Below, in pieces: positions 300 through 14,320 of a DNA stretch of 64,000 nt. The notes under the pieces were generated by a model. That model saw only the letters and a list, made by a program, of their open reading frames with translations, was not told the DNA's origin and ran no database searches. Position 1 is the stretch's first letter. Each line of letters starts with the position of its first letter. Source of the stretch: Octopus sinensis (lineage: Eukaryota); assembly GCF_006345805.1 (NCBI RefSeq), contig NC_043026.1:6324001-6388000 (forward strand). The letters run 5' to 3'. The translations under genes were made by a program, and so were the position numbers.

Positions 300-470
300 C
301 TTCTCAATGTGAGTTTGCATTTCAAAAGGAGTATCAAACTGCTTGTAGCAATGTTTACACTGGGTGAGGTCACTGAGGTCAAGATTCTGTTGCTTCTCGC
401 TGTCAATGTGACCCTGCATGTGCATCATTGTGCGCACGTTGTTGTACAACATCTTGGAACAATACCAACA
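300..470 (-). CDS. POGZ/ZNF280: Coding exon 7, two C2H2 zinc fingers (CWYC...HMQGH; CKHC...THIEK)
   Basis: Acceptor ctcgttctcttctgttgcag|, donor AAG|gtaagc, 171 nt = 57 codons. Confidence 0.95.
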
Positions 471-3400
471 CTGCAACAGAAGAGAACGAGTGAGAGCCAT
501 GGAGATAGAAAAAGAGCGGGGTGGGTGCTTTTCACAAGGTGCTAACCCCAGCGAAGTTTTCTGTAGCTTGATGGCCTTCCTAATGCTGATCCCTTTACAG
601 TGAGGACCGAGTGCCTCTGATGTGGCATCGGTGTGACAAAGGTTCCTCAAGTGAGAGGAGGTGTGCTACTGAATGAGGGGGCTTTGTGACAGGTGACCAG
701 AGGTTAAAGCAGGGGTGGGGAAACGCCCACCTACAGGCACAATTGTGCCTGCGAGCACATTTTATTGCACCCACAGGCTGGTATATTCGTATGTACAAAA
801 TATAGTAAATTTTCCAATAATAAAATTTATACGATACTCGTATGTCTCTTTGCGACATAGGTCGCGTTTCCACTACGACATAAAACGGTTAGACTCAAAC
901 AGAAAATCGTCCGGCAATTGCCATTTGAATGGAAATTTTGCTTTCACTATAAAACACATATCGCTAGGTTTGTACCACCCCCTTGAGTCCCAACTACACC
1001 CTAGCTGAAAAATATAGAATACCTCATAATTAATATAAATGTCCTAAATTCCAGATTAATAATAATAATAATAATAAAATAATAATAATAATAAAAAAAT
1101 AATAATAATAAAAATAATAATAATAATAATAGTCCTTTTTACTATAGGCACAAGGCCTGAAATTTGGGGCAAGGGGACTAGTTGATTATATCGACACCAG
1201 TGCATAACTGGTACTTAATTTATTGACCCTGAAAGGATGAAAGGCAAAGTCGACTTTGGCAGAATTTTAACTCAGAAAGTTAACCCGGGCAAAACCCCAT
1301 TTTGCATTTTGCCCACTATGTTAAAGATTCTGCTCCCTTAACAATAAAAAAAAAAAAGCCTACCTTAAATCTGTGTTCTCCTTTCTCTTCCCAATAATTT
1401 GGGTCACCTTCCATTTTGCCATAATAATATTCGTCCAGAGGGACCCAGTTTCCTGAAAGAAGAAGGTAAAAAAAAAACACAAAATAAGACTGAAGTCTCG
1501 CAAACAACAGGGACACAGGTTCAATCCTCAGATGTGATGCACACACAGCATTTTAACCCTTAGTATTTAAAGTGGCCAGATCTGGTTCAAAAATTCTAGG
1601 TTTTATGTTAAACCTGGCCAGATCCAGCTTATCACACTTACCTTACAATGTCATTCTAAAAACAAGCAATTACATCATCAAAATCTCAAAGCTATGAGAT
1701 AATTCAGGATTAATACAAAATGATATGAATATATAAGCATTGTGGAGGCGCAATGGCCCAGTGGTTAGGGCAGCGGACTCGCGGTCGTAGGATCGCGGTT
1801 TCGATTCCCAGACCGGGCGTTGTGAGTGTTTATTGAGCGAAAACACCTAAAAGCTCCACGAAGCTCCGGCAGGGGGTGGTGATCCCTGCTGTACTCTTTC
1901 ACCACTTTCTTCCACTCTTTCTTCTGTTGGCCTGCTCGCTTAGCCAGCGGGGTGGCGTCATTTGAAGGCTAAAACAATGCAAAGCACATTGTGACCAGCG
2001 ATGTGTAACTACATCTGATGGTCTGGTCGGTCACGTGATCACGTGATATAAGCATTACATTTTGATGGAGTAATCTGAATGCTAAAAAAGGGTTAAAATA
2101 GGGACCACATGAACCACTTGACCTTACACAATTTAACAGCCAAATGTCCCCAGGTATCGGGGTTTATGGCATATGGAAATTGAACACTGCAAGTAGATAT
2201 GAATGACACATTCAATAGTGTAGTATGAGGTAGACTTAGGATGAATGGGAGACAGGGTTGTCCCAGATGAAAATACTTTTAACCCCCTTTGGCATTCAGG
2301 TTACTTTGTCAAATGTAAAACCCTTTAAAGTGAGTGCCCCAGCATGGCCACAGTCAAATGACAGAAGCAAGTGAAAGTCGTGGCTGTGTGGTAAGAAGCT
2401 TGCTTCCCAACCACATGGTTCTGGGTTCAGTCCCATTGCATGGCACCTTGGGCCAGTGTCTTCTACTATAGCCTCAGGTCGCCCATAGTCTTGTGAGTGG
2501 ATTTGATAGATGGAAACTGAAAGAAGCCTGTCGTATATGTGTGTGTGTGTGTTTGTCCCCCAACCCCACCATCGTTATGTCTCCATAACCTAGCAGTTTG
2601 GCAAAAGAGACCAACAGAATAAATACTAGCTTTACAAACAATAAGTCTTGGTGCCGATTTCTTCGACTAAAACCCTTTAAGGTGGTGCTCCAGCATGGCC
2701 ACAGTCATATGACTGAAACAAGTAAAAGAATGAAGGAGTACATGACAGGCTTCTTTCAGTTTCCATCTACAAGGCTTTGGTCAAGCCCAAAGCTGTAGCG
2801 GAAGACCACTTTACCCTGGAGTGCTGCGCAGTGGGACCAAACCGGAGACCACCTAGTTGGCAAGGAAGCTTCTCCACCGCACAGCCACAACTGCACCCAT
2901 TCACAATCTCTTTCACTCTTTCACTTGTTTCAGTCATTTGACTGCGGCCATGCTGGAGCACTGCCTTAATCGAGCAAATCGACCCCGGGACTTATTCTTT
3001 GTAAGCCCAGTACTTATCCTATCAGTCTCTTTTGCCGAACCACTAAGTGACGGGGACGTAAACACACCAGCATCGGTTGTCAAGCAATGCTAGGGGCACA
3101 AACACAGACACACAAACACACACATATATATATACATATATACGACAGGCTTCTTTCAGTTTCCATCTACCAAATCCACTCACAAGGCATTGGTTTGGCC
3201 CGGGGCTATAGCAGAAGACACTTGCCCAAGGTGCCACGCAGTGGGACTGAACCCGGAACCATGTGGTTGGTTAGCAAGCTACTTACCACTCAGCCACTCC
3301 TGCGCCTACAACATTTACATTTCATGATGACAATGACGACAAAACCAGAACATCAAACCCCCACCCCGTCCCCACCCCCGCCCCGAACAACTACTGCCAC

Positions 3401-6400
3401 TGTTGACCAAAGGGAAGAAACTGACCGGCAGAGGAATCTGTTGAAGTTTTTCGCTGCACCTTCTTTTTGGGTGGGGACTGGGCTGAATCTGTGTCCGCTG
3501 ACCGTTTCAGTGTTGTCGAGGCTGTGTCCAAGGGATCGGTTTTCTTGAAGCCATAGCCGATCGTGTTAGCACTGGTGGTCCCTTGTTCGCTTTGGCTGAG
3601 GCTGTTGTTGTTGTTGTTGTTGCTGTTGTTTCCACTTCCAACTTGTCTGTGATTGGCAGCGGAGAGCAAAGAAGAGATAGCCTTTGGTAAAATCAGGGAG
3701 TGTTGCTGTGATAGGGAACTGTTTTCGCCTGTGAGAGAGAGAAAAAGGTCAGAGGTTAGAGGAGACAACGGAAAGGGCCGAGAGGTCAAGTGACTGGTCA
3801 GAGGCTGGGAAAAGCGAGGTGAAAGGGTCAAGTGATGATATGGTTAGCAGTCAAAGGAGAGAGAGGTCCAGCGGAGAGCAAAGAAGAGATAGCCTTTGGT
3901 AAAATCAGGGAGTGTTGCTGTGATAGGGAACTGTTTTCGCCTGTGAGAGAGAGAAAAAGGTCAGGGGTTAGAGGAGACAACGGAAAGGGCCGAGAGGTCA
4001 AGTGACTAGTCAGAGGCTGGGAAAAGCGAGGTGAAAGGGTCAAGTGATGATAAGGTTAGCAGTCAAAGGAGAGAGAGGTCATGTAAACAGGTGAGATGAG
4101 TAGGGTTAGGGTTAAGGTTAGGGTCAGACCTATTTCTCATGACTGGTTTAGATTAATGAATAAAGATATGGCAAGTCAGAGTCAATATAGTTTTACTGAC
4201 TCTGACTCCAGCTACCCCTAAACTGTTTCCGACTCCACAGCCCTGGTGTCATCAACACCTTGGATGGTAGAAGTGAAATAGGGCAGATCTAAATGAAGAG
4301 GGGGAAAATGACAAAGAAGGAGGGAGGGAGGGAAAGAGGATGTAGGCAAGGGAGATGGACAGAAAGACAGAGAGAGAGAGGTGGAGGAAGAGGGAATAAA
4401 TACGGAGCTAAAAAGACGGAGAGAAAGATAAATTGAGTGAGAGAAAAATAGAGAGTTACAGGAGAAAGACAGATGTACAAGAGAGAGAGATGGATAACTA
4501 GATAGACAGACAGGTAGCTAACGAGGTAGGCAGGCAGAGAGCCAGACACACAGACAGCTAACTAGACACATGGACACATGGCTAACTAGTTAGACAGACA
4601 GACAGCTAGTCAAACAACTTGCTTGTTAGACTGACAGACAGCTAGACAGACAGACAGACAGAAAGTTAGCTAGACAGACAGACAGACAGAAAGTTAGCTA
4701 GACAGATAGACAGACAGCTAGCTAGGCAGACAGACAGACAGACAGCTAGACAGACAGACAGACAGCTAGCTAGACAGATAGCTAGACAGCTAGCTAGACA
4801 GACAGACAGCTAGCTAGACAGATAGCTAGACAGATAGACAGACAGCTAGCTAGACAGATAGACAGACAGCTAGCTAGGCAGACAGACAGACAGCTAGCTA
4901 GGCAGACAGACAGACAGCTAGCTAGACAGACAGACAGACAGCAGCTAGCTAGACAGATAGACAGCTAGCTAGACAGATAGCTAGACAGATAGACAGACAG
5001 CTAGCTAGACAGATAGACAGACGACAGACAGCTAGCTAGACAGACATACAGACAGCTAGCTAGACAGACAGACAGACAGACAGCTACTAGACAGATAGCT
5101 AGACAGATAGACAGACAGCTAGCTAGACAGATAGACAGACAGACAGACAGCTAGCTAGGCAGACAGACAGACAGCTAGCTAGACAGACAGACAGACAGCT
5201 AGCTAGACAGATAGACAGACAGCTAGCTAGACAGACAGACAGCTACTAGACAGATAGCTAGACAGATAGACAGACAGCTAGCTAGACAGATAGACAGACA
5301 GACAGACAGCAGCTAGCTAGACAGCAGACAGACAGCTAGCTAGACAGATAGCTAGACAGATAGACAGACAGCTAGCTAGACAGACAGACAGATAGCTAGA
5401 CAGATAGACAGACAGCTAGCTAGGCAGACAGACAGACAGCTAGCTAGACAGACATACAGACAGACAGACAGCTAGCTAGACAGCTAGACAGACAGACACA
5501 CAGGCAGCTAGCTAGGCAGACAGACAGATAGCTAGACAGACAGACAGACAGAGCTAGACAGACAGACAGACAGCTAGCTAGACAGATAGCTAGACAGCTA
5601 GCTAGACAGACAGACAGCTAGCTAGACAGATAGCTAGACAGCTAGCTAGACAGATAGACAGACAGCTAGCTAGGCAGACAGACAGACAGCTAGCTAGGCA
5701 GACAGACAGACAGCTAGCTAGACAGCTAGCTAGACAGATAGCTAGACAGATAGACAGACAGCTAGCTAGACAGATAGACAGACAGACAGACAGCTAGCTA
5801 GGCAGACAGACAGACAGCTAGCTAGACAGACAGACAGACAGACAGCTAGCTAGACAGATAGCTAGACAGATAGACAGACAGCTAGCTAGACAGATAGACA
5901 GACAGACAGACAGCTAGCTAGGCAGACAGACAGACAGCTAGCTAGACAGACAGACAGACAGCTAGCTAGACAGATAGACAGACAGCTAGCTAGACAGACA
6001 GACAGCTAGCTAGACAGATAGCTAGACAGATAGACAGACAGCTAGCTAGACAGATAGACAGACAGACAGACAGCTAGCTAGGCAGACAGACAGACAGCTA
6101 GCTAGACAGATAGCTAGACAGATAGACAGACAGCTAGCTAGACAGACAGACAGATAGCTAGACAGATAGACAGACAGCTAGCTAGGCAGACAGACAGACA
6201 GCTAGCTAGACAGACATACAGACAGACAGACAGCTAGCTAGACAGACAGACAGCTAGCTAGACAGACAGACACACAGGCAGCTAGCTAGGCAGACAGACA
6301 GATAGCTAGACAGACAGACAGACAGAGCTAGACAGACAGAAGACAGCTAGCTAGACAGATAGCTAGACAGCTAGCTAGCAGACAGACAGCTAGCTAGACA

Positions 6401-9400
6401 GATAGCTAGACAGATAGACAGACAGCTAGCTAGACAGATAGACAGACAGCTAGCTAGGCAGACAGACAGACAGCTAGCTAGACAGACATACAGACAGCTA
6501 GCTAGCAGACAGACAGACAGCTAGCTAGACAGACAGAAGACAGCTAGCTAGACAGATAGCTAGACAGATAGACAGACAGCTAGCTAGACAGATAGACAGA
6601 CAGACAGACAGCTAGCTAGGCAGACAGACAGACAGCTAGCTAGACAGACAGACAGACAGACAGCTAGCTAGACAGATAGCTAGACAGATAGACAGACAGC
6701 TAGCTAGACAGATAGACAGACAGACAGACAGCTAGCTAGGCAGACAGACAGACAGCTAGCTAGACAGACAGACAGACAGCTAGCTAGACAGATAGCTAGA
6801 CAGATAGACAGACAGACAGCTAGCTAGACAGATAGCTAGACAGATAGACAGACAGCTAGCTAGACAGATAGACAGACAGACAGACAGCTAGCTAGGCAGA
6901 GACAGACAGCTAGCTAGACAGATAGCTAGACAGATAGACAGACAGCTAGCTAGACAGACAGACAGATAGCTAGACAGATAGACAGACAGCTAGCTAGGCA
7001 GACAGACAGACAGCTAGCTAGACAGACATACAGACAGACAGACAGCTAGCTAGACAGACAGACACACAGGCAGCTAGCTAGGCAGACAGACAGATAGCTA
7101 GACAGACAGACAGACAGCTAGCTAGACAGATAGACAGACAGACAGACAGCTATCTAGGCAGACAGACAGACAGCTAGCTAGGCAGACAGACAGACAGCTA
7201 GCTAGGCAGACAGACAGACAGCTAGCTAGACAGATAGACAGACAGCTAGCTAGGCAGACAGACAGACAGCTAGAAAGACAGACTGACAGACAGCTAGACA
7301 GACAAATAAGACAAACAGACAGACGAAACAGGAAGATTAGACAAAAGGAGAATTTTAGATGAAAAACAAATTCTTTTTAAATGAAGGCAAAGCCTTAATA
7401 AAATAAAAAAAAACATCAATCAATAAACTTACCAGGTTTTCGCATTTGTCCCTGGACTTTGCCGAGGGACATGTTTCCCGCAAGGTTTTTGTTGAGGGTG
7501 TTGGCAGTGAGCATGGAGTTTGAAAGAGAAGAGCGCTGTAATTGGTTGGCATGGAGTTGGGACTGGAAGGAAAAGAAGGAGGAGAACAATAGTTTAAGAT
7601 CGACTCCACTAAATAAAGGGACACGAAGGGATTCAGGAGTTCAGTTAACATTCTCTTTACTCTTTTACTTGTTTCAGTCATTTGACTGCGGCCATGCTGG
7701 AGCACCGCCTTTAATCGAGCAACTCGACCCCGGGACTTATTCTTTTGTAAGCCCAGTACTTATTCTATCGGTCTCTTTTGCCGAACCGCTAAGTAACGGG
7801 GACATAAACACACCAGCATCGGTTGTCAAGCAATGCTAGGGGGACAAACACAGACACACAAACACACGTATATACATATATACGACAGGCTTCTTTCAGT
7901 TTCCGTCTACCAAATCTACTCACAAGGCTTCGGTCGGCCCGAGTCTATAGTAGAAGACACTTGCCGAAGGTGCCACGCAGTAGGACTGAACCCGGAACCA
8001 TGTGGTTGGTAAACAAGCTACTTACCACACAACCACTCCTGCGCCTATATTCAACTCTTTTAGCATTCGGATTACTCTGCCAAACACAATGTAACACCCG
8101 CAATAGTTGGAGGATTATTCTCTCTGGGTGTGTGTGTGTGTGTGTAATTATATCGACCCCAGTGCGTAACTGGTACTTTATTTATCGACCCCCGAAAGGA
8201 TGAAAGGCAAAGTCGACCTCGGCAGAATTTGAACTCAGAACACAACAGCAGACGAAATACTGCTAAGCATTTCGCCCGGCGTGCTAATATTTCTGCCAGC
8301 TCGCCGCCTTCAATAAAGCAGCCTTTCTGATAGACAGTGACCTCGTTAGAGGTTTTGTTATTTGGCTTCTTTCAGTTTCCGTCTACAAAATCCACTCACA
8401 AGGCTTTGGGTTTGTTTGAGGCTATCGTAGAAGACACTTGCCCAAGGTGCCACACAGCGGGACTGAACCGAGAACCATGTGGTTGGGAAGCAACCTTCTT
8501 ACCACACAGCCACAAAAGTGAAAAGCACACACACACCACACACATTTTCACTTACACACACACACAATGACACCCCCCACACACATTTTCACTTACACAC
8601 ACATACAATGACTCCCCACACACAACATTTTCACTTACACACATACACACATTTTCACTTACACACACACACACATTTTCACTTACACACACAATGACAC
8701 CCCCCACACACACATTTTCACTTACACACACATACAATGACTCCCCACACACACACACATTTTTACTCACACACACACACATACATTTTCACTCACATAC
8801 ACACACACACACACACATTTTCACTCACACACACACACACACACATTTTCACTCACACACATATTTTCACTCACACGCACCCACACACACAATGACCCCC
8901 CCCCTCACACACACACACCCACACACTTACCTTCAGAAGCTGTGTCGAACCCATTCTCGATTGCTGAACCTGGTTTGGAACTCGGGTCGCTGGCGTCTCA
9001 CCAACAATGATCACATCAGGGGATTTACTCCTAGGAAGGGCTGAAAGATAACAACACAAAACAGTTACCCTCAGGGCAGACTTCTGGGTGATGAGTAGTT
9101 TGCACACCCCGGGGGCTAGATATTGCAATGTTCCACGGTCAATAATGGACAGAGAATAAAGCAACTTTTCTTATTTCTTTACTACCCACAAGGGGCTAAA
9201 CACAGAGGGGACAAACAAGGACAGACAAACGGATTAAGTCGATTATATCGACCCCAGTGCGTAACTGGTACTTAATTTATCGACCCCGAAAGGATGAAAG
9301 CCAAAGTCGACCTCTACCTGGTCACTAGATTTACTAGAAATAACAACCAGAGTAAATTTCCTGGGGTTAATCTGTTTCTTTACTACCCACAAGGGGCTAA

Positions 9401-11332
9401 ATACAGAGAGGACAAACAAGGACAGACAAACGGATTAAGTTGATTATATTGACCCCAGTGTGTAACTGGTACTTTAATTGACCCCAAAAGGATGAAAGGC
9501 AAAGTCGACCTCAGCAGAATTTGAACTCAGAACACAACGGCAGACGAAATACTGCTAAGCATTTCGCCCGGTGTGCTAATATTTCTGCCAGCTCACTACC
9601 TTCAATAAAGCAACCTTTCTAACAGACAGTGACCTCGTTAGGGGTTTTGTTATTTGGCTAAAAACAGCATTAACTTAGAAAAGGGTTTGAACAGGGTGAA
9701 GAGGGAGAGACTGGCAACTTACAAGCTGGGGTGGTAACAGACGATGCTTTCTGTTGTATCATTTGACGGGCTTTTGCAGCTTTGATACGTTGGACTGCTT
9801 TCTCGTAGTCATCCAGGGCCCGACGGGAAGCTTCGATTTGCCACGGGGACAAATCATCTTCCTCACATTCCATCATGAGCTCCAGGGAGCTCTGGTTGGA
9901 TCGCCGAAGCGAGTACGGTCCTTTTATCTTCGCCATTATCTGTGGAAGAGAAAAGAAAGGTAAGTAAGATTAAGTCAGCAAAAGAATACCTATTTCTTTA
10001 CTGCCCACACGGGGCTAAACACAGAGGGGACAAACAAGGACAGACGAATGGATTAAGTCAATTACATGGACCCCCAGTGTGTAACTGGTACTTCATTTAT
10101 CGACCCCGAAAGGATGACAGGCAAAGTCGACCCCGGTGGAATTTGAACTCAGAACGTAGCGGCAGACGAAATACCTATTTCTTTACTACTCACAAGGGGC
10201 TTACTAAACACAGAGGGGACAAACGGATTAAGTCGATTACATGGACCCCTAGTGTGTAACTGGTACATAATTTATCGACCCCGAAAGGATGACAGGCAAA
10301 GTCGACCCCGGTGGAATTTGAACTCAGAACATAGCGGCAGACGAAATACCTATTTCTTTACTACCCACAAGGGGCTAAACACAGAGGGGACAAACGGATT
10401 AAGTGGATTACATGGACCCCCAGTGCGTAACTGGTACTTAATTTATCGACCCCAAAAGGATGAAAGGCAAAGTCGACCTCGGCGGAATTTGAACTCAGAA
10501 CATAACGGCAGACGAAATACGGCTATGCATTTTGCCCGGCGTGCTAACGATTCTGCCAGCACGCGGCAAAAGAATACAGTGTCTTCACTGCTGCACAGAG
10601 GGCATGCCCTCGCTCCACAATGTGCCCTCATTCCCCATGGGCACCCTCACACACCCACACTATGGCACAACACATTCTCACTACACAAACACCATCGCTA
10701 ACAAACAAAATAATCCAAACATTTAAAATAAAAACACACGGACAAATACATATCTTTTATCTTTTACTTGTTTCAATCATTGGATTGCAGCCAAGATGGA
10801 GCACCACCTTGGAGTATTTTAGTTCAAGAAATCACCCCTAGTCATCACTATTATTTAGCATGGGCGGGACGGTTTCACAGGCAGAAAACTCCACCAGACT
10901 TCTCTGACTGTTTAAGCAGGATTTTTACAGCTGGATGCCCTTCCTAACACCAACCACTCCAAGAGTGCAGTAGATGCTTTTACGTGTCACCGGCACGAGG
11001 GCCAGTCAAGCGCTTCTGGCAACGACCACGTTGTTTTTACATGCTATCTGTACGGGAGCCAGTTTTGCGGCACTGGCAACAACAACGCTCAAATGTTGTT
11101 TTCCACGTGCCACCGGTATATGTGCCAGTAAGGCGATGCTGGCAACAATCATGCTCGAATGGTGCTTTTCACATGTCACTGGCACAGGAACCAATCTGTG
11201 GCCCTGGCAACGACCACGCTCGGACGTTCTTTTAACATTCAACTGATACGAGTGCCAATCAGGCAGTACTGTCATCGGCCACGTCAGTGATTTTGATTTG
11301 TTTACATTTGCCTCAATATGTGTGTGTGTGTA

Positions 11333-11371
<39 letters not shown>

Positions 11372-14320
11372 TCATCATCATCATTTAGCGTCCGCTTTCC
11401 ATGCTAGCATCGGTTGGACGGTTCAACTGGGGTCTGTGAAGCCAGAAGGCTGCATCAGGCTCAGTCTGATCTGGCAGTGTTTCTACGGCTGGATGCCCTT
11501 CCTAACGCCAACCACTCCGTGAGTGTAGTGGGTGCTTTTTATGTGCCACCCGCACAGGTGCTAGACAGAGCTGGCAAACGGCCACGGTCGGATGATGCTT
11601 AAACGAACATAGCCAATAAGATCCATGGTGATAGAGTCCCAAAAGGGCATCCAGCTGTAAAAACCCTGCCAAAACAGACACAGGTGTGGGGCAGTCTTCA
11701 GCCTGGTCAGCTCCTGTCCAACTGTCCAATCTATGCCAGCATGGAAGGCAGATGTTAAGTGATGACGATGACGATAATCGTAAGATACTATGGATATATT
11801 TCCATGGTGTGAAGGCGCGTGGCTCAGTGGTTAGAGCATCGAGCTTACGATCGTGAGGTTGTGAGCTCGAATCCTGGACTGGGCTGCGTGTTGTGTTCTT
11901 GAGCAAGACACTTTATTTTACGTTGCTCCAGTTCACTCAGCTGTAGAAATGAGTTGTGATGTCACAGGTGCCAAGCTGTATCGGCCCCTTTGCCTTTCCC
12001 TTGGACAACATCGGTGACGTGGAGGGGAAGGCCGGTATGCATGGGCGACTACTGGTCTTCCATAAAACAACCTTGCCCAGACTTGTGCTTCAGAGGGTAA
12101 CTCTCTAGGTGCAAACCCATGGTCAGTGTCTGACCGAAGGGGGTCACCATTTCCATGGTGAACTTTCTCCACAGTGAATTGATGGCAGTGAACTGACCTG
12201 TAGTGGACCTCAGCAGGACTTGAGTGGAGTTTGCAAAACAGCTGTGGCTAAAATACAACTACGTATTTATATTTGCCATTCCAGTGGGTCTGCCAGCCCC
12301 AGGGGGACATGAGGTACAAGACCAAGGCCTTCCCATGGCTCAGGCCTAGGTTCAATGAAGCAGAACAAAACAAAGTTCTGGCCATTCCATATGACAAGTT
12401 GTGATGGGAAGGAACGGCAGAAATAAAGACGAGGGGTGTTGCAGAGGTAAGGATGTGTCGTGGTGGAAAAACAGTGGTGGAAGGGTGCGGGTATGGTCAA
12501 GGGCAATCGAATAAGGATTTCTAACATAGCTACAAGGGGGCGTCGTCATCGTCTTAATTTAATGCCTGGAGGTGATGAGAAGTGACCGGGCCCTTTGGGG
12601 ATATGCTGTGCTAGAGAAGACTCGTCAAATCAAGTGAAATTGTGGTCATGGTCGTTGCAGATGTCATGTAAGTGGCACCCGTAAAATTGTAGTTGTGGCC
12701 CTTGCCGGTGTTGTGTAAATGGCACTTGTGCTGGTGGCACATAAAAGGCACCTGTTATCCTCTCAGAGTGGTTGGTGTTCGGAAGGGCATCCAGCCGTAG
12801 AAACCATGCCAAATCTGACCTAGTGTAGCTCTCTGGCTGACCAGTTTTCAGTCAAACTGTCCAACCCATGCCAGCATGGAAAGTGGATGTTAAATGATGG
12901 TGGTGGTGATGATGATGATGATGATGACCCATGTTGGCATGTGGGAGAGGCGGGTAGTTTGACAGGATCTGACCGGGGCCCATACTTCAATGCCCGGATG
13001 CTGTTTCCCTTTCCCACCCACCCACCCCTGCCCCCATTTTCCAATGCCAACCCCTTTTGCAGAGAGTATAGGGTGGCAACCCATCACGTTGACCTCCACC
13101 TCCACCTCTGGGGTTAATTCATTTTGCAGATACAAGAAGCTTGATAAACGATGGTTCCAGAAAAGATAAACAAAAAAAAAAAAAAGAAATTTAAAAAGAA
13201 AAAGAAAAAAAAAGAAGCAAAACAACATGAATATGATAAACAAAAATAAATAAAAAATTTTAAATAAAATAAATAAAACAAGAATTGGCAGGGAAATAGC
13301 AGAAGTGGTTTAAGTGTGTAGAAGGGGTCAGAGCTGCTCATGTTTGGACAAAGGGGGTGTTGAAAGATTTTGAATGCGGTGGGGGTGAAAGAGAGAGAGA
13401 GAGAGATAAAGACTGTGAGTGACACAGCATGAGGTGATGATGTTGGTGTTGGTAGTAGTGGTGGTGGTGGTGGTGGTAGTAGTAGTAGTAATTTGACCCC
13501 ACAAGGTCAGCCTTGACTGAGCAGATAGGGAACCTATCATCAAAGAAGGCGGGCACTCCAGGCACGACCATCCTGTCTCTTTTGTCGACACGCTGCTCTG
13601 TGCTGCGGGAGCCCCAGACAACATTATATGGCGCAACACTCTCGAAGGCGGCACGGTGTCATTCAAGAGAGATTTAGCTGCTATTTCATGCAGACCGTGT
13701 GAACATAGAGAGCAGTCGTGGGCAAACCGTGGCCCGGGTCACATCTCATGCGACCCAGCTCATGGTGAAGAAAGTCTGTCCAAATCTGGTGTAAAGGATT
13801 TCTCACCGGCTTCCCCCTCGTCTCCCAACGGTCAAAGTAGTGAGTGGTGGGGGGTGGGGGGGGTGATGGTGGTGGTTGGTGGAGATGGCATGGATGGGAC
13901 GAGAATACTTACTGTATTGCTGTCGACTTTTCCCTTGGCTGGGCTGCGCTCCTCCTCGGTCCCTGGGGACTGGTTCTCCCTCTCTGCGGGTAAGCTGGTC
14001 GGCAATTCAAACTGCGAGTCGAGGAACTCCTTACGCTTTTGACCCCTAATTTTCTCACGCTTGCTGTACTTCCTTGATGCCGATCTCCTAACGTAATCCA
14101 ACAGTTTCCGCCGTTCAGCAGTGTCGTGTTCGCTCCTCGCGTCTCGGTACAGCGACAGTATCCACCTGGCGGACTGCAGACACGAGACGTTGAGTCTCTT
14201 TGCATATTTCAAAATCTCAAAGACGAGGCCGACCTTCACCTTGTCGGGAGGGGTCAACGTGCCCGACTGCAAAGACTCTGGGGTCAGACCAACTTCAGCA
14301 GCATATGGTCCAAGTTCCAT
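300..14320 (-). CDS. POGZ/ZNF280: POGZ/ZNF280-family C2H2 zinc-finger protein, 7 coding exons in window (476 codons), 3' part lies beyond position 1
   Basis: All six introns are GT-AG with matching phases (0,1,0,1,1,0). The spliced protein has LELMMECEEDDLSPWQ (family N-terminal MECEEEELEPWQ motif), SPDVIIVGE (like the family's IFVGE motif), DEYYYGKMEG...RFKCWYCSKMLYNNVRTMMHMQGH and CKHCYKQFDTPFEMQTHIEK, matching the YYG..FKC..C.K.L.NN.RFM.HM.HH / CQHCY.QF.TPF.LQ.H zinc-finger cluster of POGZ/ZNF280. The paralogue cannot be resolved by eye. Confidence 0.9.
710..1040 (+). mobile_element. hAT-like DNA transposon / MITE 5' end fragment
   Basis: Starts CAGGGGTGGGGAAAC followed by the palindrome caggcacaattgtgcctg, an end structure typical of hAT elements. 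No partner end found. Confidence 0.4.
1140..1290 (-). mobile_element. SINE family B fragment (long-tail variant) next to a (TAA)n tract
   Basis: Contains the reverse complement of the family core tttgcctttcatccttt..gggtc.ataaattaagtaccag. (TAA)n at about 1056-1130. Confidence 0.8.
1364..1452 (-). CDS. POGZ/ZNF280: Coding exon 6 (NWVPLDEYYYGKMEG...EHRFK)
   Basis: Acceptor ttaccttcttctttcag|, donor AAG|gtaggc, 89 nt (phase 1 to 0). Contains the YYG motif that precedes the zinc fingers in this family. Confidence 0.92.
1557..2092. mobile_element. piggyBac-like MITE (family F) interrupted by a SINE
   Basis: TTAA|CCCTT...AAGGG|TTAA ends (TTAA at 1553-1556 and 2093-2096). Internal sequence matches copies at 25 kb, 31.5 kb and 52-53 kb. 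Confidence 0.8.
1741..2045 (+). mobile_element. tRNA-derived SINE family E, full length, nested in the MITE
   Basis: A box TGGCCCAGTGG, B box-like GGTTTCGATTCCC. Target-site duplication ATATAAGCAT at 1731-1740 and 2046-2055. A partial 3' copy lies at about 26140-26235. Confidence 0.85.
2377..2745 (+). mobile_element. tRNA-derived SINE family A, diverged copy
   Basis: Head GTGGCTGTGTGGTAAG...GGTTCAGTCCC, central (TG)n, 3' end GAAACAAGTAAAAG. About 25 full or partial copies in the window. Confidence 0.85.
2925..3305 (-). mobile_element. SINE family A, young full-length copy
   Basis: Near-identical to the copies at 7655-8048, 17521-17965, 25648-26045, 29575-29952, 37132-37528 and 39522-39930. 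Confidence 0.9.
3426..3728 (-). CDS. POGZ/ZNF280: Coding exon 5 (ENSSLSQQH...poly-N...PPKKKVQRK...DSSA)
   Basis: Acceptor ctttttctctctctcacag|GC, donor GCCG|gtcagt, 303 nt (phase 1 to 1). Contains an SV40-like basic NLS candidate PPKKKVQRK. Confidence 0.85.
3657..4080. repeat. Direct tandem duplication, 212-bp unit x2, spanning the exon-5 acceptor
   Basis: 3657-3868 and 3869-4080 align with only a few substitutions (e.g. gactggtca/gactagtca, gatatgg/gataagg). Confidence 0.95.
4170..4245 (-). mobile_element. Fragment of GGAGTC-repeat hAT-like MITE
   Basis: Ends GACTCCACAGCCCTG, the reverse complement of the 5' end of the element at 54807. Confidence 0.6.
4495..7325. repeat. About 2.8-kb complex tetranucleotide satellite (GACA/GCTA/GATA) in intron 4
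   Basis: Mosaic of tetramers. The rare landmark CACACAGGCAGCTA recurs at about 5497, 6271 and 7063. Confidence 0.95.
7433..7562 (-). CDS. POGZ/ZNF280: Coding exon 4 (SQLHANQLQRSS...GQMRKP)
   Basis: Acceptor ctccttcttttccttccag|, donor CCTG|gtaagt, 130 nt (phase 0 to 1), open frame. This frame differs from the one shown in the ORF track. Confidence 0.85.
7655..8048 (-). mobile_element. SINE family A, young full-length copy
   Basis: Same consensus as 2925-3305. Confidence 0.9.
8520..8925. repeat. (CA)n-based compound minisatellite (acacattttcacttacac... units)
   Basis: Repeated ACATTTTCACT motif embedded in CA runs, directly after the exon-3 donor. Confidence 0.85.
8931..9040 (-). CDS. POGZ/ZNF280: Coding exon 3 (LPRSKSPDVIIVGE...STQLLK)
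   Basis: Acceptor gttgttatctttcag|, donor AAG|gtaagt, 110 nt (phase 1 to 0). Confidence 0.9.
9180..9600 (-). mobile_element. Two SINE family B segments
   Basis: Family B core and 3' end (ctttactacccacaaggggctaaa) seen twice. Confidence 0.8.
9723..9939 (-). CDS. POGZ/ZNF280: Coding exon 2 (IMAKIKG...LELMMECEEDDLSPWQ...TTPA)
   Basis: Acceptor ctttcttttctcttccacag|ATAATG, donor GCTT|gtaagt, 217 nt (phase 0 to 1). Carries the MECEE motif. Confidence 0.92.
9985..10560 (-). mobile_element. Head-to-tail trimer of SINE family B (about 175-185-bp units)
   Basis: Junction GACGAAATAC|CTATTTC at about 10175 and 10350. Only the rightmost unit keeps the tRNA-like head. Confidence 0.9.
10850..11770. mobile_element. 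Cluster of SINE-like family C copies, (GAT)n tail with internal ~60-bp subrepeats
   Basis: Core GGAAGGGCATCCAGCTGTAGAAA and tail CATGCTAGCATGGAAA.CGGACGTTAAACGATGAT in both orientations. About 20 copies in the window. Confidence 0.8.
11807..12148 (+). mobile_element. tRNA-derived SINE family D with CORE-like domain
   Basis: A box TGGCTCAGTGG, B box GCTCGAATCC, then CTTGAGCAAGACACTT...CTCAGCTGTAGAAATG. An inverse partial copy lies at 46901-47160. Confidence 0.8.
13913..14320 (-). CDS. POGZ/ZNF280: Coding exon 1 (MELGPYAAEVG...GKVDSNT, 136 aa), unrecognised helical domain
   Basis: ATG at 14320 in aaaatcATGG context with an in-frame TAA 9 nt upstream. Acceptor ttttgcctccaag| at 14344 implies an upstream non-coding exon. 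Donor ACA|gtaagt at 13912 is phase 0 and matches exon 2. Confidence 0.8.

What the first reader, a model, noticed from the sequence alone, without database searches (positions are those of the whole stretch)
13913..14320. POGZ/ZNF280 homolog has an extra single-exon 136-aa N-terminal domain placed ahead of the family's usual start
Seen: this exon splices in phase 0 onto exon 2, whose first bases are ATA ATG G (an ATG in strong context) shortly before LELMMECEEDDLSPWQ. Known: in vertebrate POGZ and ZNF280 the MECEEEELEPWQ motif lies within the first residues of the protein. The added segment looks like a folded helical domain (VKVGLVFEILKYAKRL..ARWILSLY..RKLLDYVRRS..KRKEFLDSQFELP), not low-complexity linker. 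Inference: lineage-specific exon capture, possibly from a transposase N-terminus. That would parallel the pogo-transposase fusion in vertebrate POGZ. Isoforms with and without the domain are possible.
Basis: partly seen in the sequence, partly recalled or inferred. Interest (0 to 1): 0.7.

Follow-up and report, generated by a model that had tools for sequence, protein, structure and literature searches.

The report
Cephalopod-only N-terminal exon of POGZ-like gene
The 408-base stretch is a real protein-coding first exon, conserved between this cephalopod and cuttlefish, that most likely puts a 136-residue helical and basic head in front of a POGZ/ZNF280-like zinc-finger protein; no relative of the head was found anywhere else, and nothing links it to a transposase.

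Summary
On the minus strand, 14320..13913 is a 136-codon ORF. It has a strong-context ATG, an in-frame stop two codons upstream and a perfect GTAAGT donor. It is phase-0 compatible with the acceptor at 9939 (cag|ATA ATG G...MECEEDDLSPWQ).

It is a genuine exon. Cuttlefish DNA carries the same ORF (70% aa identity, pN 0.21 vs saturated pS 0.88). Conservation starts at the ATG and stops at the donor.

On a 63-kb cuttlefish-type contig the exon lies 8.4 kb upstream of the MECEE exon, on the same strand and collinear with five further exons. The deposited gene model 'POGZ [Acanthosepion pharaonis]' joins the two exons in the same phase. No RNA evidence could be reached.

The domain has no detectable relative. 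Pfam, PDB sequences, Foldseek against PDB, a HMMER search of 1.84 billion representatives and 40 non-cephalopod homologues (34 of them lophotrochozoan) all found nothing. So it is restricted to coleoid cephalopods as far as these searches can see.

Transposase capture is unsupported. The premise is only partly right: several bivalve, annelid and nemertean orthologues carry a THAP domain in the same N-terminal slot, and short isoforms start at the conserved Met. Verdict: a new variant of a known kind, of modest interest.

The parts
13913..14320 (-). Coding exon 1 (136 codons; start ATG at 14320-14318). Residues 1-60 are a conserved helical module (82% identical to cuttlefish). Residues 61-106 are a basic helix and NLS-like stretch (net +7, 70% identical). 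Residues 107-136 are a poorly conserved acidic/proline linker (43% identical).
13907..13912 (-). 5' splice donor GTAAGT directly after codon 136 (phase 0). The same hexamer sits at the same codon in the cuttlefish-type loci. Protein similarity ends here.
9940..13906 (-). Body of intron 1 (repeat-rich; with the donor hexamer at 13907-13912 the intron is about 4.0 kb). It holds no block conserved with the 8.4-kb cuttlefish-type intron.
   Evidence: blastn and tblastx of the window against L014/L015
9723..9939 (-). Exon 2. Acceptor ...ttctcttccacag|, then ATA ATG (second in-frame ATG at 9936-9934, strong context). It holds the family motif LELMMECEEDDLSPWQ and ends in phase 1 at CTT|GTAAGT.
8931..9040 (-). 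Exon 3 (SLPRSKSPDVIIVGETPATRVPNQVQQSRMGSTQLLK).
3426..3728 (-). Later exon (..LPKAISSLL..SPPKKKVQRKTSTDSSAG). One or more small exons between 8931 and 3728 were not located, because the phases do not connect directly.
1364..1452 (-). Exon encoding NWVPLDEYYYGKMEGDPNYWEEKGEHRFK, a family-conserved block.
300..470 (-). Exon encoding the first zinc fingers (CWYCSKMLYNNVRTMMHMQGHIDSEKQQNLDLSDLTQCKHCYKQFDTPFEMQTHIEK). The gene then runs off the low end of the window.
   Evidence: 97% identical to P0009 residues 417-476

Best explanation
What it is: 14320..13913 (minus strand) is the first coding exon of the cephalopod orthologue of the POGZ/ZNF280 zinc-finger chromatin-protein family.

How the long form is made: translation starts at the ATG at 14320. 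The exon is spliced in phase 0 to the acceptor at 9939. The product carries a 136-residue N-terminal extension ahead of the conserved Met/MECEE exon.

What the extension consists of:
- a conserved helical module of about 60 residues;
- a strongly basic helix resembling a nuclear-localisation signal (LLDYVRRSASRKYxKREKxRGxKRxxFLDSxFELP);
- a variable acidic linker.

Where it came from: it is an orphan module shared by this cephalopod and cuttlefish, so it arose at or before their common ancestor. It is undetectable in any other animal.

What it replaces: it occupies the slot where several other lophotrochozoan orthologues carry a THAP DNA-binding domain.

Inferred function (not shown): it acts as an alternative targeting head, giving nuclear import plus DNA, chromatin or partner binding.

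Inferred isoforms (not shown): a shorter isoform starting at the conserved exon-2 ATG is probably also made, from an alternative promoter or by skipping the exon.
For: Shown:
- ORF, start context, upstream stop, donor, acceptor and phase.
- Protein-level purifying selection against a deeply diverged cephalopod: pN/pS 0.24 overall and 0.18 for codons 1-107, with pS saturated.
- Conservation bounded exactly by the ATG and GTAAGT.
- The read-through tail after the donor is not conserved: VSILVPSMP.. in the window against VSTYSNVFL.. in cuttlefish.
- Exon-1 and exon-2 homologues lie on one ENA contig, same strand, 8.4 kb apart, followed by the later exons.
- The only conserved blocks between the window and that contig are these collinear exons.
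- The stretch from acceptor to ATG is 3 nt here (ATA) and 6 nt in the two cuttlefish-type sequences (AAAACT, AAAAGT). It is always in frame and free of stops.
- The model 'POGZ [Acanthosepion pharaonis]' reads ...EVDTDL-KT-MAKVKG...MECEEDELSPWQ and has the Pfam zf-POGZ domain.
- Absence elsewhere.
- THAP in the same slot in other orthologues, and short isoforms starting at the conserved Met.
- Helical prediction and charge profile.

Inferred: the function of the module, and the existence of two isoforms.
Against: - No transcript or junction read was available. The cuttlefish model is computational.
- The 5' end of that model is demonstrably wrong. Its first 42 residues come from AT-rich DNA just upstream of the conserved ATG, and a mini-intron skips the 38 best-conserved codons. 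It is therefore weak independent support for the join.
- Phase compatibility alone is a 1-in-3 event.
- The AF2 models are of modest confidence (mean pLDDT 62-67) and have no structural neighbour, so the function is a guess.
- Cephalopod proteins other than this one model were absent from the searchable protein sets. Absence of an annotated octopus protein with this exon therefore says nothing either way.
Confidence: 0.72

Rival explanations
1. The exon is the first coding exon of a separate, conserved neighbouring gene, or of a transcript that splices to an acceptor other than 9939. Its position upstream of the POGZ-like gene would then be conserved synteny only.
For: No RNA evidence links the two exons. 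Phase match is 1 in 3. The only model that joins them is computational and has a faulty 5' end.
Against: - No other conserved coding block exists in intron 1 or within 10 kb upstream in the cross-species comparison.
- Order, strand and phase are kept in three sequence sets, despite a 3-nt against 6-nt difference before the exon-2 ATG.
- A 136-residue peptide with a conserved donor must splice somewhere, and exon 2 is the next conserved acceptor.
Confidence: 0.13
2. One reading: the domain was captured from a transposase N-terminus (an HTH-type DNA-binding head), in parallel with the pogo fusion of vertebrate POGZ.
For: - The family has a record of transposase-derived additions: pogo/Passer at the C-terminus in vertebrates (PMC7386202), and THAP at the N-terminus in several lophotrochozoans.
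- Helices 30-43 and 47-56 could be read as helix-turn-helix.
Against: - No Pfam hit even at E<=10.
- No PDB sequence hit.
- Foldseek's best hit has E 2.3 and TM<0.4.
- hhalign against the orthologues' THAP domains gives probability 0.2%.
- HMMER over 1.84 billion representatives finds only the two cephalopod entries, so there is no multicopy family as a transposon source would leave.
- It is single-copy in the window.
Confidence: 0.05
3. The domain arose by duplication within the gene, from a cephalopod-specific C-terminal region of the same protein (P0009 residues about 950-1050: IGPLCEKLSIDTDVLEGH..ITKAVALELLYYKKRN..SVWILNIF..).
For: - BLASTP of N-terminus against C-terminus gives E 0.049 over 60 residues.
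- hhalign gives E 0.036.
- A Smith-Waterman shuffle test with the cuttlefish sequence gives 44 of 2000 shuffles reaching the observed score.
- The best local hit falls in the same place in every test.
Against: - hhalign probability is only 1.4%.
- With the window's own sequence, 330 of 2000 shuffles reach the observed score.
- The HMMER domain i-Evalue is 2.5 in a set of 44 proteins.
- The C-terminal region is known from a single computational model, which may be a fusion.
Confidence: 0.07
4. It is ancestral and simply too diverged to recognise: a remnant of an old lophotrochozoan upstream exon rather than a coleoid gain.
For: - The intron position just before the conserved Met, and the use of upstream coding exons, look old. 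Oyster isoforms join different 5' exons directly before MVFKKG/MVKKSG.
- Exon 1 evolves about three times faster than exon 2: pN 0.21 against 0.07.
Against: - None of the 40 non-cephalopod homologues scanned (34 lophotrochozoan) shows any similarity.
- Where an upstream domain exists, it is a zinc-binding THAP fold, whereas this one is all-helical with no conserved Cys or His.
Confidence: 0.1

Closest known systems
THAP-headed POGZ/ZNF280-like orthologues of other lophotrochozoans (e.g. Mytilus trossulus LOC134719102 X2, Ostrea edulis LOC125661824 X2, Capitella CAPTEDRAFT_222950, Tubulanus LOC141913879)
   Same: - Same gene family (zf-POGZ, MECEE motif, NWVPLDEYYYGK block).
- An accessory domain of about 90-140 residues is encoded upstream and joined just before the conserved Met that precedes the MECEE motif.
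- Isoforms without it start at that Met.
   Different: Their head is a C2CH zinc-binding THAP domain (Pfam E 1e-11 to 1e-15). The cephalopod head is all-helical, has no conserved Cys or His and shows no profile similarity to THAP. No THAP exon was found in the 50 kb of window upstream of exon 1.
Vertebrate POGZ (pogo/Passer transposase fusion) and ZNF280A-D
   Same: Shared N-terminal MECEE..L.PWQ motif, the YYYGK block and the atypical C2H2 cluster. Both show lineage-specific addition of an extra module to a conserved zinc-finger core (PMC7386202).
   Different: - In vertebrates the addition is C-terminal and clearly transposase-derived (HTH_Tnp_Tc5 + DDE), and the motif sits at residues 5-8.
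- Here the addition is N-terminal and of unknown origin.
- The cuttlefish orthologue shows no pogo domains in Pfam.
'POGZ [Acanthosepion pharaonis]' (P0009, deposited gene model, 1108 aa)
   Same: Orthologue. It contains residues 39-136 of the same domain, joined to the MECEE exon in the same phase. Identity across the window's exons is 43-97%.
   Different: Its first 42 residues are an annotation artefact. They are read from the AT-rich DNA just 5' of the true ATG, and a mini-intron removes the conserved MELGPYAAE...VFEIL start. In sister contigs that upstream frame is closed by stops.

Membership tests
POGZ/ZNF280 zinc-finger family | N-terminal acidic motif (L/F)MECEE..L.P.Q | tested here: met
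   LELMMECEEDDLSPWQ is in exon 2. The motif was found in 34 of the 45 homologues scanned.
POGZ/ZNF280 zinc-finger family | Conserved NWVPLDEYYYGK block followed by the atypical C2H2 cluster | tested here: met
   Window exons 1452-1364 and 470-300 are 88% and 97% identical to P0009. Homologues are named ZNF280D-like or POGZ by their sources.
POGZ/ZNF280 zinc-finger family | Pfam zf-POGZ double zinc finger (PF25429) | not testable with these tools
   That part of the gene lies beyond the low end of the window. It is present in the cuttlefish orthologue P0009 at residues 666-706, E 1.9e-14.
POGZ sensu stricto (vertebrate chimeric gene) | C-terminal pogo transposase part (HTH_Tnp_Tc5 + DDE_1) | tested here: not met
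   Neither domain was found in P0009 by Pfam. The window itself does not reach the 3' end. The gene is therefore ZNF280-like rather than POGZ proper.
THAP domain | C2CH zinc-binding signature and the AVPTIF box | tested here: not met
   No Pfam THAP hit for exon 1 or for exon 1 + exon 2. No conserved Cys or His. hhalign against the orthologues' THAP domains gives probability 0.2%.
Transposase N-terminal DNA-binding heads (HTH_psq, CENP-B_N, HTH_Tnp_Tc5 and the like) | Profile or fold similarity to a transposase HTH domain | tested here: not met
   Pfam found none at E<=10. PDB sequence search found none. Foldseek against PDB gave a best E of 2.3. Caveat: the AF2 model has only modest confidence.

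The most novel reading that the evidence does not exclude
A chromatin regulator that is otherwise highly conserved across animals acquired an N-terminal domain of about 105 residues with no detectable ancestor. The acquisition happened in the stem lineage shared by this cephalopod and cuttlefish. The origin would be de novo exonisation, or possibly duplication of a cephalopod-specific C-terminal region. The new domain functionally replaced the THAP DNA-binding head that other lophotrochozoan orthologues carry in the same slot, retargeting the protein in coleoid cephalopods.
Probability: 0.25. Interest if true: 0.45.

Novelty: new variant of a known kind. Interest (0 to 1): 0.3.

Why it matters
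POGZ/ZNF280-type proteins are conserved heterochromatin and transcription regulators, and human POGZ is a major neurodevelopmental disease gene. If the exon is used as inferred, three things follow.

- Coleoid cephalopods have kept a private, selected N-terminal module on this regulator since this cephalopod and cuttlefish diverged.
- It sits in the same slot where other lophotrochozoans carry a THAP domain.
- It would be a clean, testable example of 'head swapping' on a conserved zinc-finger core, and of an orphan domain that persists under purifying selection.

There is also a practical point. The deposited Acanthosepion pharaonis POGZ model has a wrong 5' end, and cephalopod annotations should start this gene at MELGPYAAE. 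Lineage-specific N-terminal extensions and alternative first coding exons are common, so the general surprise is limited.

Tried and rejected
1. Pfam on exon 1, on exon 2 and on the spliced 208 aa gave nothing for exon 1.
2. The word-indexed protein search with exon 1 or exon 2 returned only genomic ORF fragments from cephalopod read assemblies and no transcript-derived protein. Splicing therefore could not be verified.
3. Exact look-ups of the window's own ORFs were not on record. P0009's contig was not retrievable.
4. Two AF2 models (136 aa and a trimmed 107 aa) and two Foldseek searches of PDB gave no match with E<2. The PDB sequence search gave none.
5. Duplication from the C-terminus within the gene was attractive by eye but is statistically weak. 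It is kept only as a low-probability rival.
6. Derivation from THAP: no similarity, and no THAP exon in the window.
7. I first took the ORF at 1968..1846 (PSNDATPLAKRAG...) for an exon. It has no counterpart in the orthologue and runs into a repeat-like stretch, so I dropped it.
8. The species behind most read sets could not be identified. Only ERR12945500 was traced, to Acanthosepion esculentum. The window's own species is not established. It is a coleoid deeply diverged from cuttlefish (saturated pS), and probably an octopod.
9. The sigma-70 promoter scan and the tRNA scan are irrelevant or empty for this eukaryotic locus.


Full report
**1. The observation**

Everything here is on the minus strand.
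- 14320..13913 reads ATG plus 135 sense codons (MELGPYAAEVGLTPESLQSGTLTPPDKVKVGLVFEILKYAKRLNVSCLQSARWILSLYRDARSEHDTAERRKLLDYVRRSASRKYSKREKIRGQKRKEFLDSQFELPTSLPAERENQSPGTEEERSPAKGKVDSNT).
- The ATG has A at -3 and G at +4. An in-frame TAA lies two codons upstream.
- Codon 136 is followed directly by GTAAGT.
- At 9939 a long pyrimidine tract and cacag| precede ATA ATG GCG..., which encodes IMAKIKGPYSLRRSNQSSLELMMECEEDDLSPWQ.
- Long ORFs are common in this repeat-rich window, so ORF length is not evidence by itself.

**2. It is a real, selected exon**

- The peptide finds one cluster of homologues in 5.8 billion proteins: genomic ORFs from cephalopod read assemblies, 70% identical, E 7.6e-52.
- In a DNA alignment with the 2.2-kb contig L001 nothing aligns until the ATG. 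The 408 bases then align without gaps, and similarity stops at the shared GTAAGT.
- Differences fall 36/25/86 on codon positions 1/2/3. pN is 0.207 and pS is 0.877, which is saturated. For codons 1-107 pN/pS is 0.18.
- The read-through tails after the donor are unrelated in the two species. The unit under selection is therefore ATG to donor, not an intronless small ORF.
- Identity by segment is 82% for residues 1-60, 70% for 61-106 and 43% for 107-136.

**3. It belongs, most probably, to the POGZ/ZNF280-like gene**

- Exon 2 has homologues at 87% and 98% identity. One of the read sets behind the 87% form is Acanthosepion esculentum (ERR12945500; bioRxiv 10.1101/2025.04.22.649952).
- Cluster members revealed a 63-kb ENA contig (ERZ21867824 ctg99168l) that carries both homologues on the same strand. 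Exon 1 is 8.4 kb upstream of exon 2, and the later exons follow.
- blastn and tblastx between the window and that contig find only collinear blocks: exon 1, exon 2, exon 3 (9040-8931), 3728-3426, 1452-1364 and 470-300. Nothing else is conserved in intron 1 or in the 10 kb upstream.
- The distance from acceptor to exon-2 ATG is 3 nt here (ATA) and 6 nt in the two cuttlefish-type sequences (AAAACT, AAAAGT). All are in frame and free of stops.
- An all-against-all HMMER search with the exon-1 profile over 1.84 billion representatives returned just two proteins: the genomic ORF, and P0009, a 1108-aa protein.
- P0009 is deposited as 'POGZ [Acanthosepion pharaonis]'. It reads ...KIEVDTDL-KT-MAKVKGSYSLRRHNQSSLELMMECEEDELSPWQ..., which is the same exon-1-to-exon-2 join in the same phase. 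It carries Pfam zf-POGZ at E 1.9e-14.
- Caveat: P0009 is a computational model with a faulty 5' end. Its first 42 residues end in ..QLANSK. That sequence is the translation of the AT-rich DNA just upstream of the conserved ATG in sister contigs (CAGTTGGCAAATAGCAAG|GTGATAA), where the frame is closed by stops further up. The model then jumps by a mini-intron to an internal AAG|TATGCA and skips the 38 best-conserved codons.
- P0009 therefore supports the join only as an independent gene-finder's choice.
- No transcript-derived cephalopod protein was reachable. The splice remains inferred. I put it at about 0.8.

**4. What the module is**

- There is no Pfam family at E<=10 and no PDB sequence relative.
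- AF2 on 136 aa and on a trimmed 107 aa predicts an all-helical structure: helices 5-9, 14-19, 30-43, 47-56, 67-89 and 94-103.
- pLDDT is 70-81 over residues 1-60. The means are 62 and 67, and pTM is 0.55-0.57.
- Foldseek against PDB gives nothing better than E 2.3 and TM 0.4.
- Residues 61-106 carry 15 Lys/Arg (net +7), with an almost invariant LLDYVRRSASRKYxKREKxRGxKRxxFLDSxFELP. The last 30 residues are acidic, proline-rich and poorly conserved.
The fold is unassigned.

**5. Lineage-specific or ancestral, and is it from a transposase?**

- A search with P0009 returned 44 homologues: gastropods, bivalves, a chiton, a brachiopod, nemerteans, annelids, insects and fishes.
- A local hmmsearch with all filters off finds the module only in P0009. 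Every other homologue has E>1. Together, the domain is undetectable outside cephalopods.
- It is shared by the window's species and cuttlefish, whose synonymous sites are saturated. The gain is therefore old within coleoids.
- The window's own species was not identified. It is probably an octopod.
- There is no sign of a transposon source. The module is single-copy in the window, has no paralogous family in the libraries and has no transposase-domain similarity.
  - The motif starts within the first 18-55 residues in many orthologues, and at residue 5 in fish pogzb.
  - It starts at residue 125-201 in others.
  - Mytilus, Ostrea, Capitella and Tubulanus orthologues have a bona fide THAP domain at residues about 4-100, ahead of the motif. 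In Lingula the THAP domain lies behind it.
- Oyster isoforms join different 5' exons directly in front of the same conserved Met (..DRT|MVKKSG..LKR|MVFKKGG, against the start MVFKKG).
- An upstream coding exon spliced just before that Met, with a short isoform starting at the Met, therefore looks like an old feature of the gene in lophotrochozoans.
- Cephalopods carry a different, orphan module in that slot. hhalign against THAP gives probability 0.2%, and no THAP exon lies in the 50 kb of window upstream.

**6. A lead that did not hold**

- By eye, the module resembles a region near the C-terminus of P0009 (IGPLCEKLSIDTDVLEGH...ALELLYYKKRN...SVWILNIF).
- The statistics are weak:
  - BLASTP E 0.049;
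  - hhalign E 0.036 but probability 1.4%;
  - 44 of 2000 shuffles reach the score with the cuttlefish sequence, and 330 of 2000 with the window's sequence;
  - HMMER i-Evalue 2.5.
- I keep duplication within the gene as a low-probability rival.

**7. Mechanism, committed**

- Shown: a conserved first coding exon with start, donor, collinearity and phase.
- Inferred:
  - It is spliced to exon 2, giving a long isoform with a helical and basic N-terminal head.
  - The conserved exon-2 Met gives a short isoform from an alternative start or by exon skipping.
  - The head supplies nuclear import plus an additional DNA, chromatin or partner contact, as THAP does in other lophotrochozoan orthologues.

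**8. Comparison and verdict**

- The gene meets the family features that can be tested in the window: the MECEE motif, the YYYGK block and the first fingers.
- Judged from the cuttlefish orthologue, it lacks the vertebrate pogo part (PMC7386202). It is ZNF280-like rather than POGZ proper.
- The finding is a new variant of a known kind: a known gene family and a known habit of swapping N-terminal heads, with a head that has no known relatives.
- Interest is modest, at 0.3.

Noticed in passing
window 3657-4080 (minus-strand gene): A 212-bp tandem duplication (3657-3868 and 3869-4080, 99% identical). It copies the acceptor and the first 72 nt of the exon that starts at 3728. The upstream copy would read into a stop, so it is probably a pseudo-acceptor inside the intron.
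   Followed up: partly
P0009 ('POGZ [Acanthosepion pharaonis]') residues 1-42; L001 about 590-635; L014 about 9950-10000: The deposited cuttlefish gene model has a spurious 5' end. It translates AT-rich DNA just upstream of the true ATG (..QLANSK|GTGATAA) and skips the conserved first 38 codons through a mini-intron.
   Followed up: yes
Orthologues P0023, P0024, P0028, P0040, P0041 (N-terminal) and P0034 (internal): POGZ/ZNF280-like orthologues of bivalves, an annelid, a nemertean and a brachiopod carry a THAP domain (Pfam E 1e-11 to 1e-18). The Pomacea isoform X5 starts with what looks like only the tail of one (..KLTEGAVPSIQ). Alternative 5' coding exons seem to be the rule for this gene in lophotrochozoans.
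   Followed up: partly
P0009 residues about 800-1108: The C-terminal 300 residues of the cuttlefish model are not covered by any non-cephalopod orthologue (query coverage 55-59%) and have no Pfam match. This is either a second cephalopod-specific region or a model fusion. It shows weak, non-significant similarity to the exon-1 module.
   Followed up: partly
window 8931-3728 (minus strand): Exon 3 ends in phase 0, but the exon at 3728 needs phase 1. At least one small exon is missing from my model. The cuttlefish contig has one at L015 12270-12353 (VPTSMLTAINNPHT..), which tblastn did not find in the window.
   Followed up: no
whole window, e.g. 15268-14981, 24245-23892, 47858-47496, 52241-51759, 58550-58070: Many copies, in both orientations, of a repeat whose translation contains ..[27 protein letters not shown].., together with long (TA/CA)n and TC-rich microsatellites. 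These account for most long ORFs in the window and for intron 1.
   Followed up: no
window 13913-14320 against the whole window: Exon 1 is GC-rich relative to its surroundings (54% GC, GC3 65%, against 42% for the window). The cuttlefish copy has GC3 49% in a contig of 30% GC. pS of 0.88, above the 0.75 expected at random, suggests a codon-usage shift between the lineages.
   Followed up: partly
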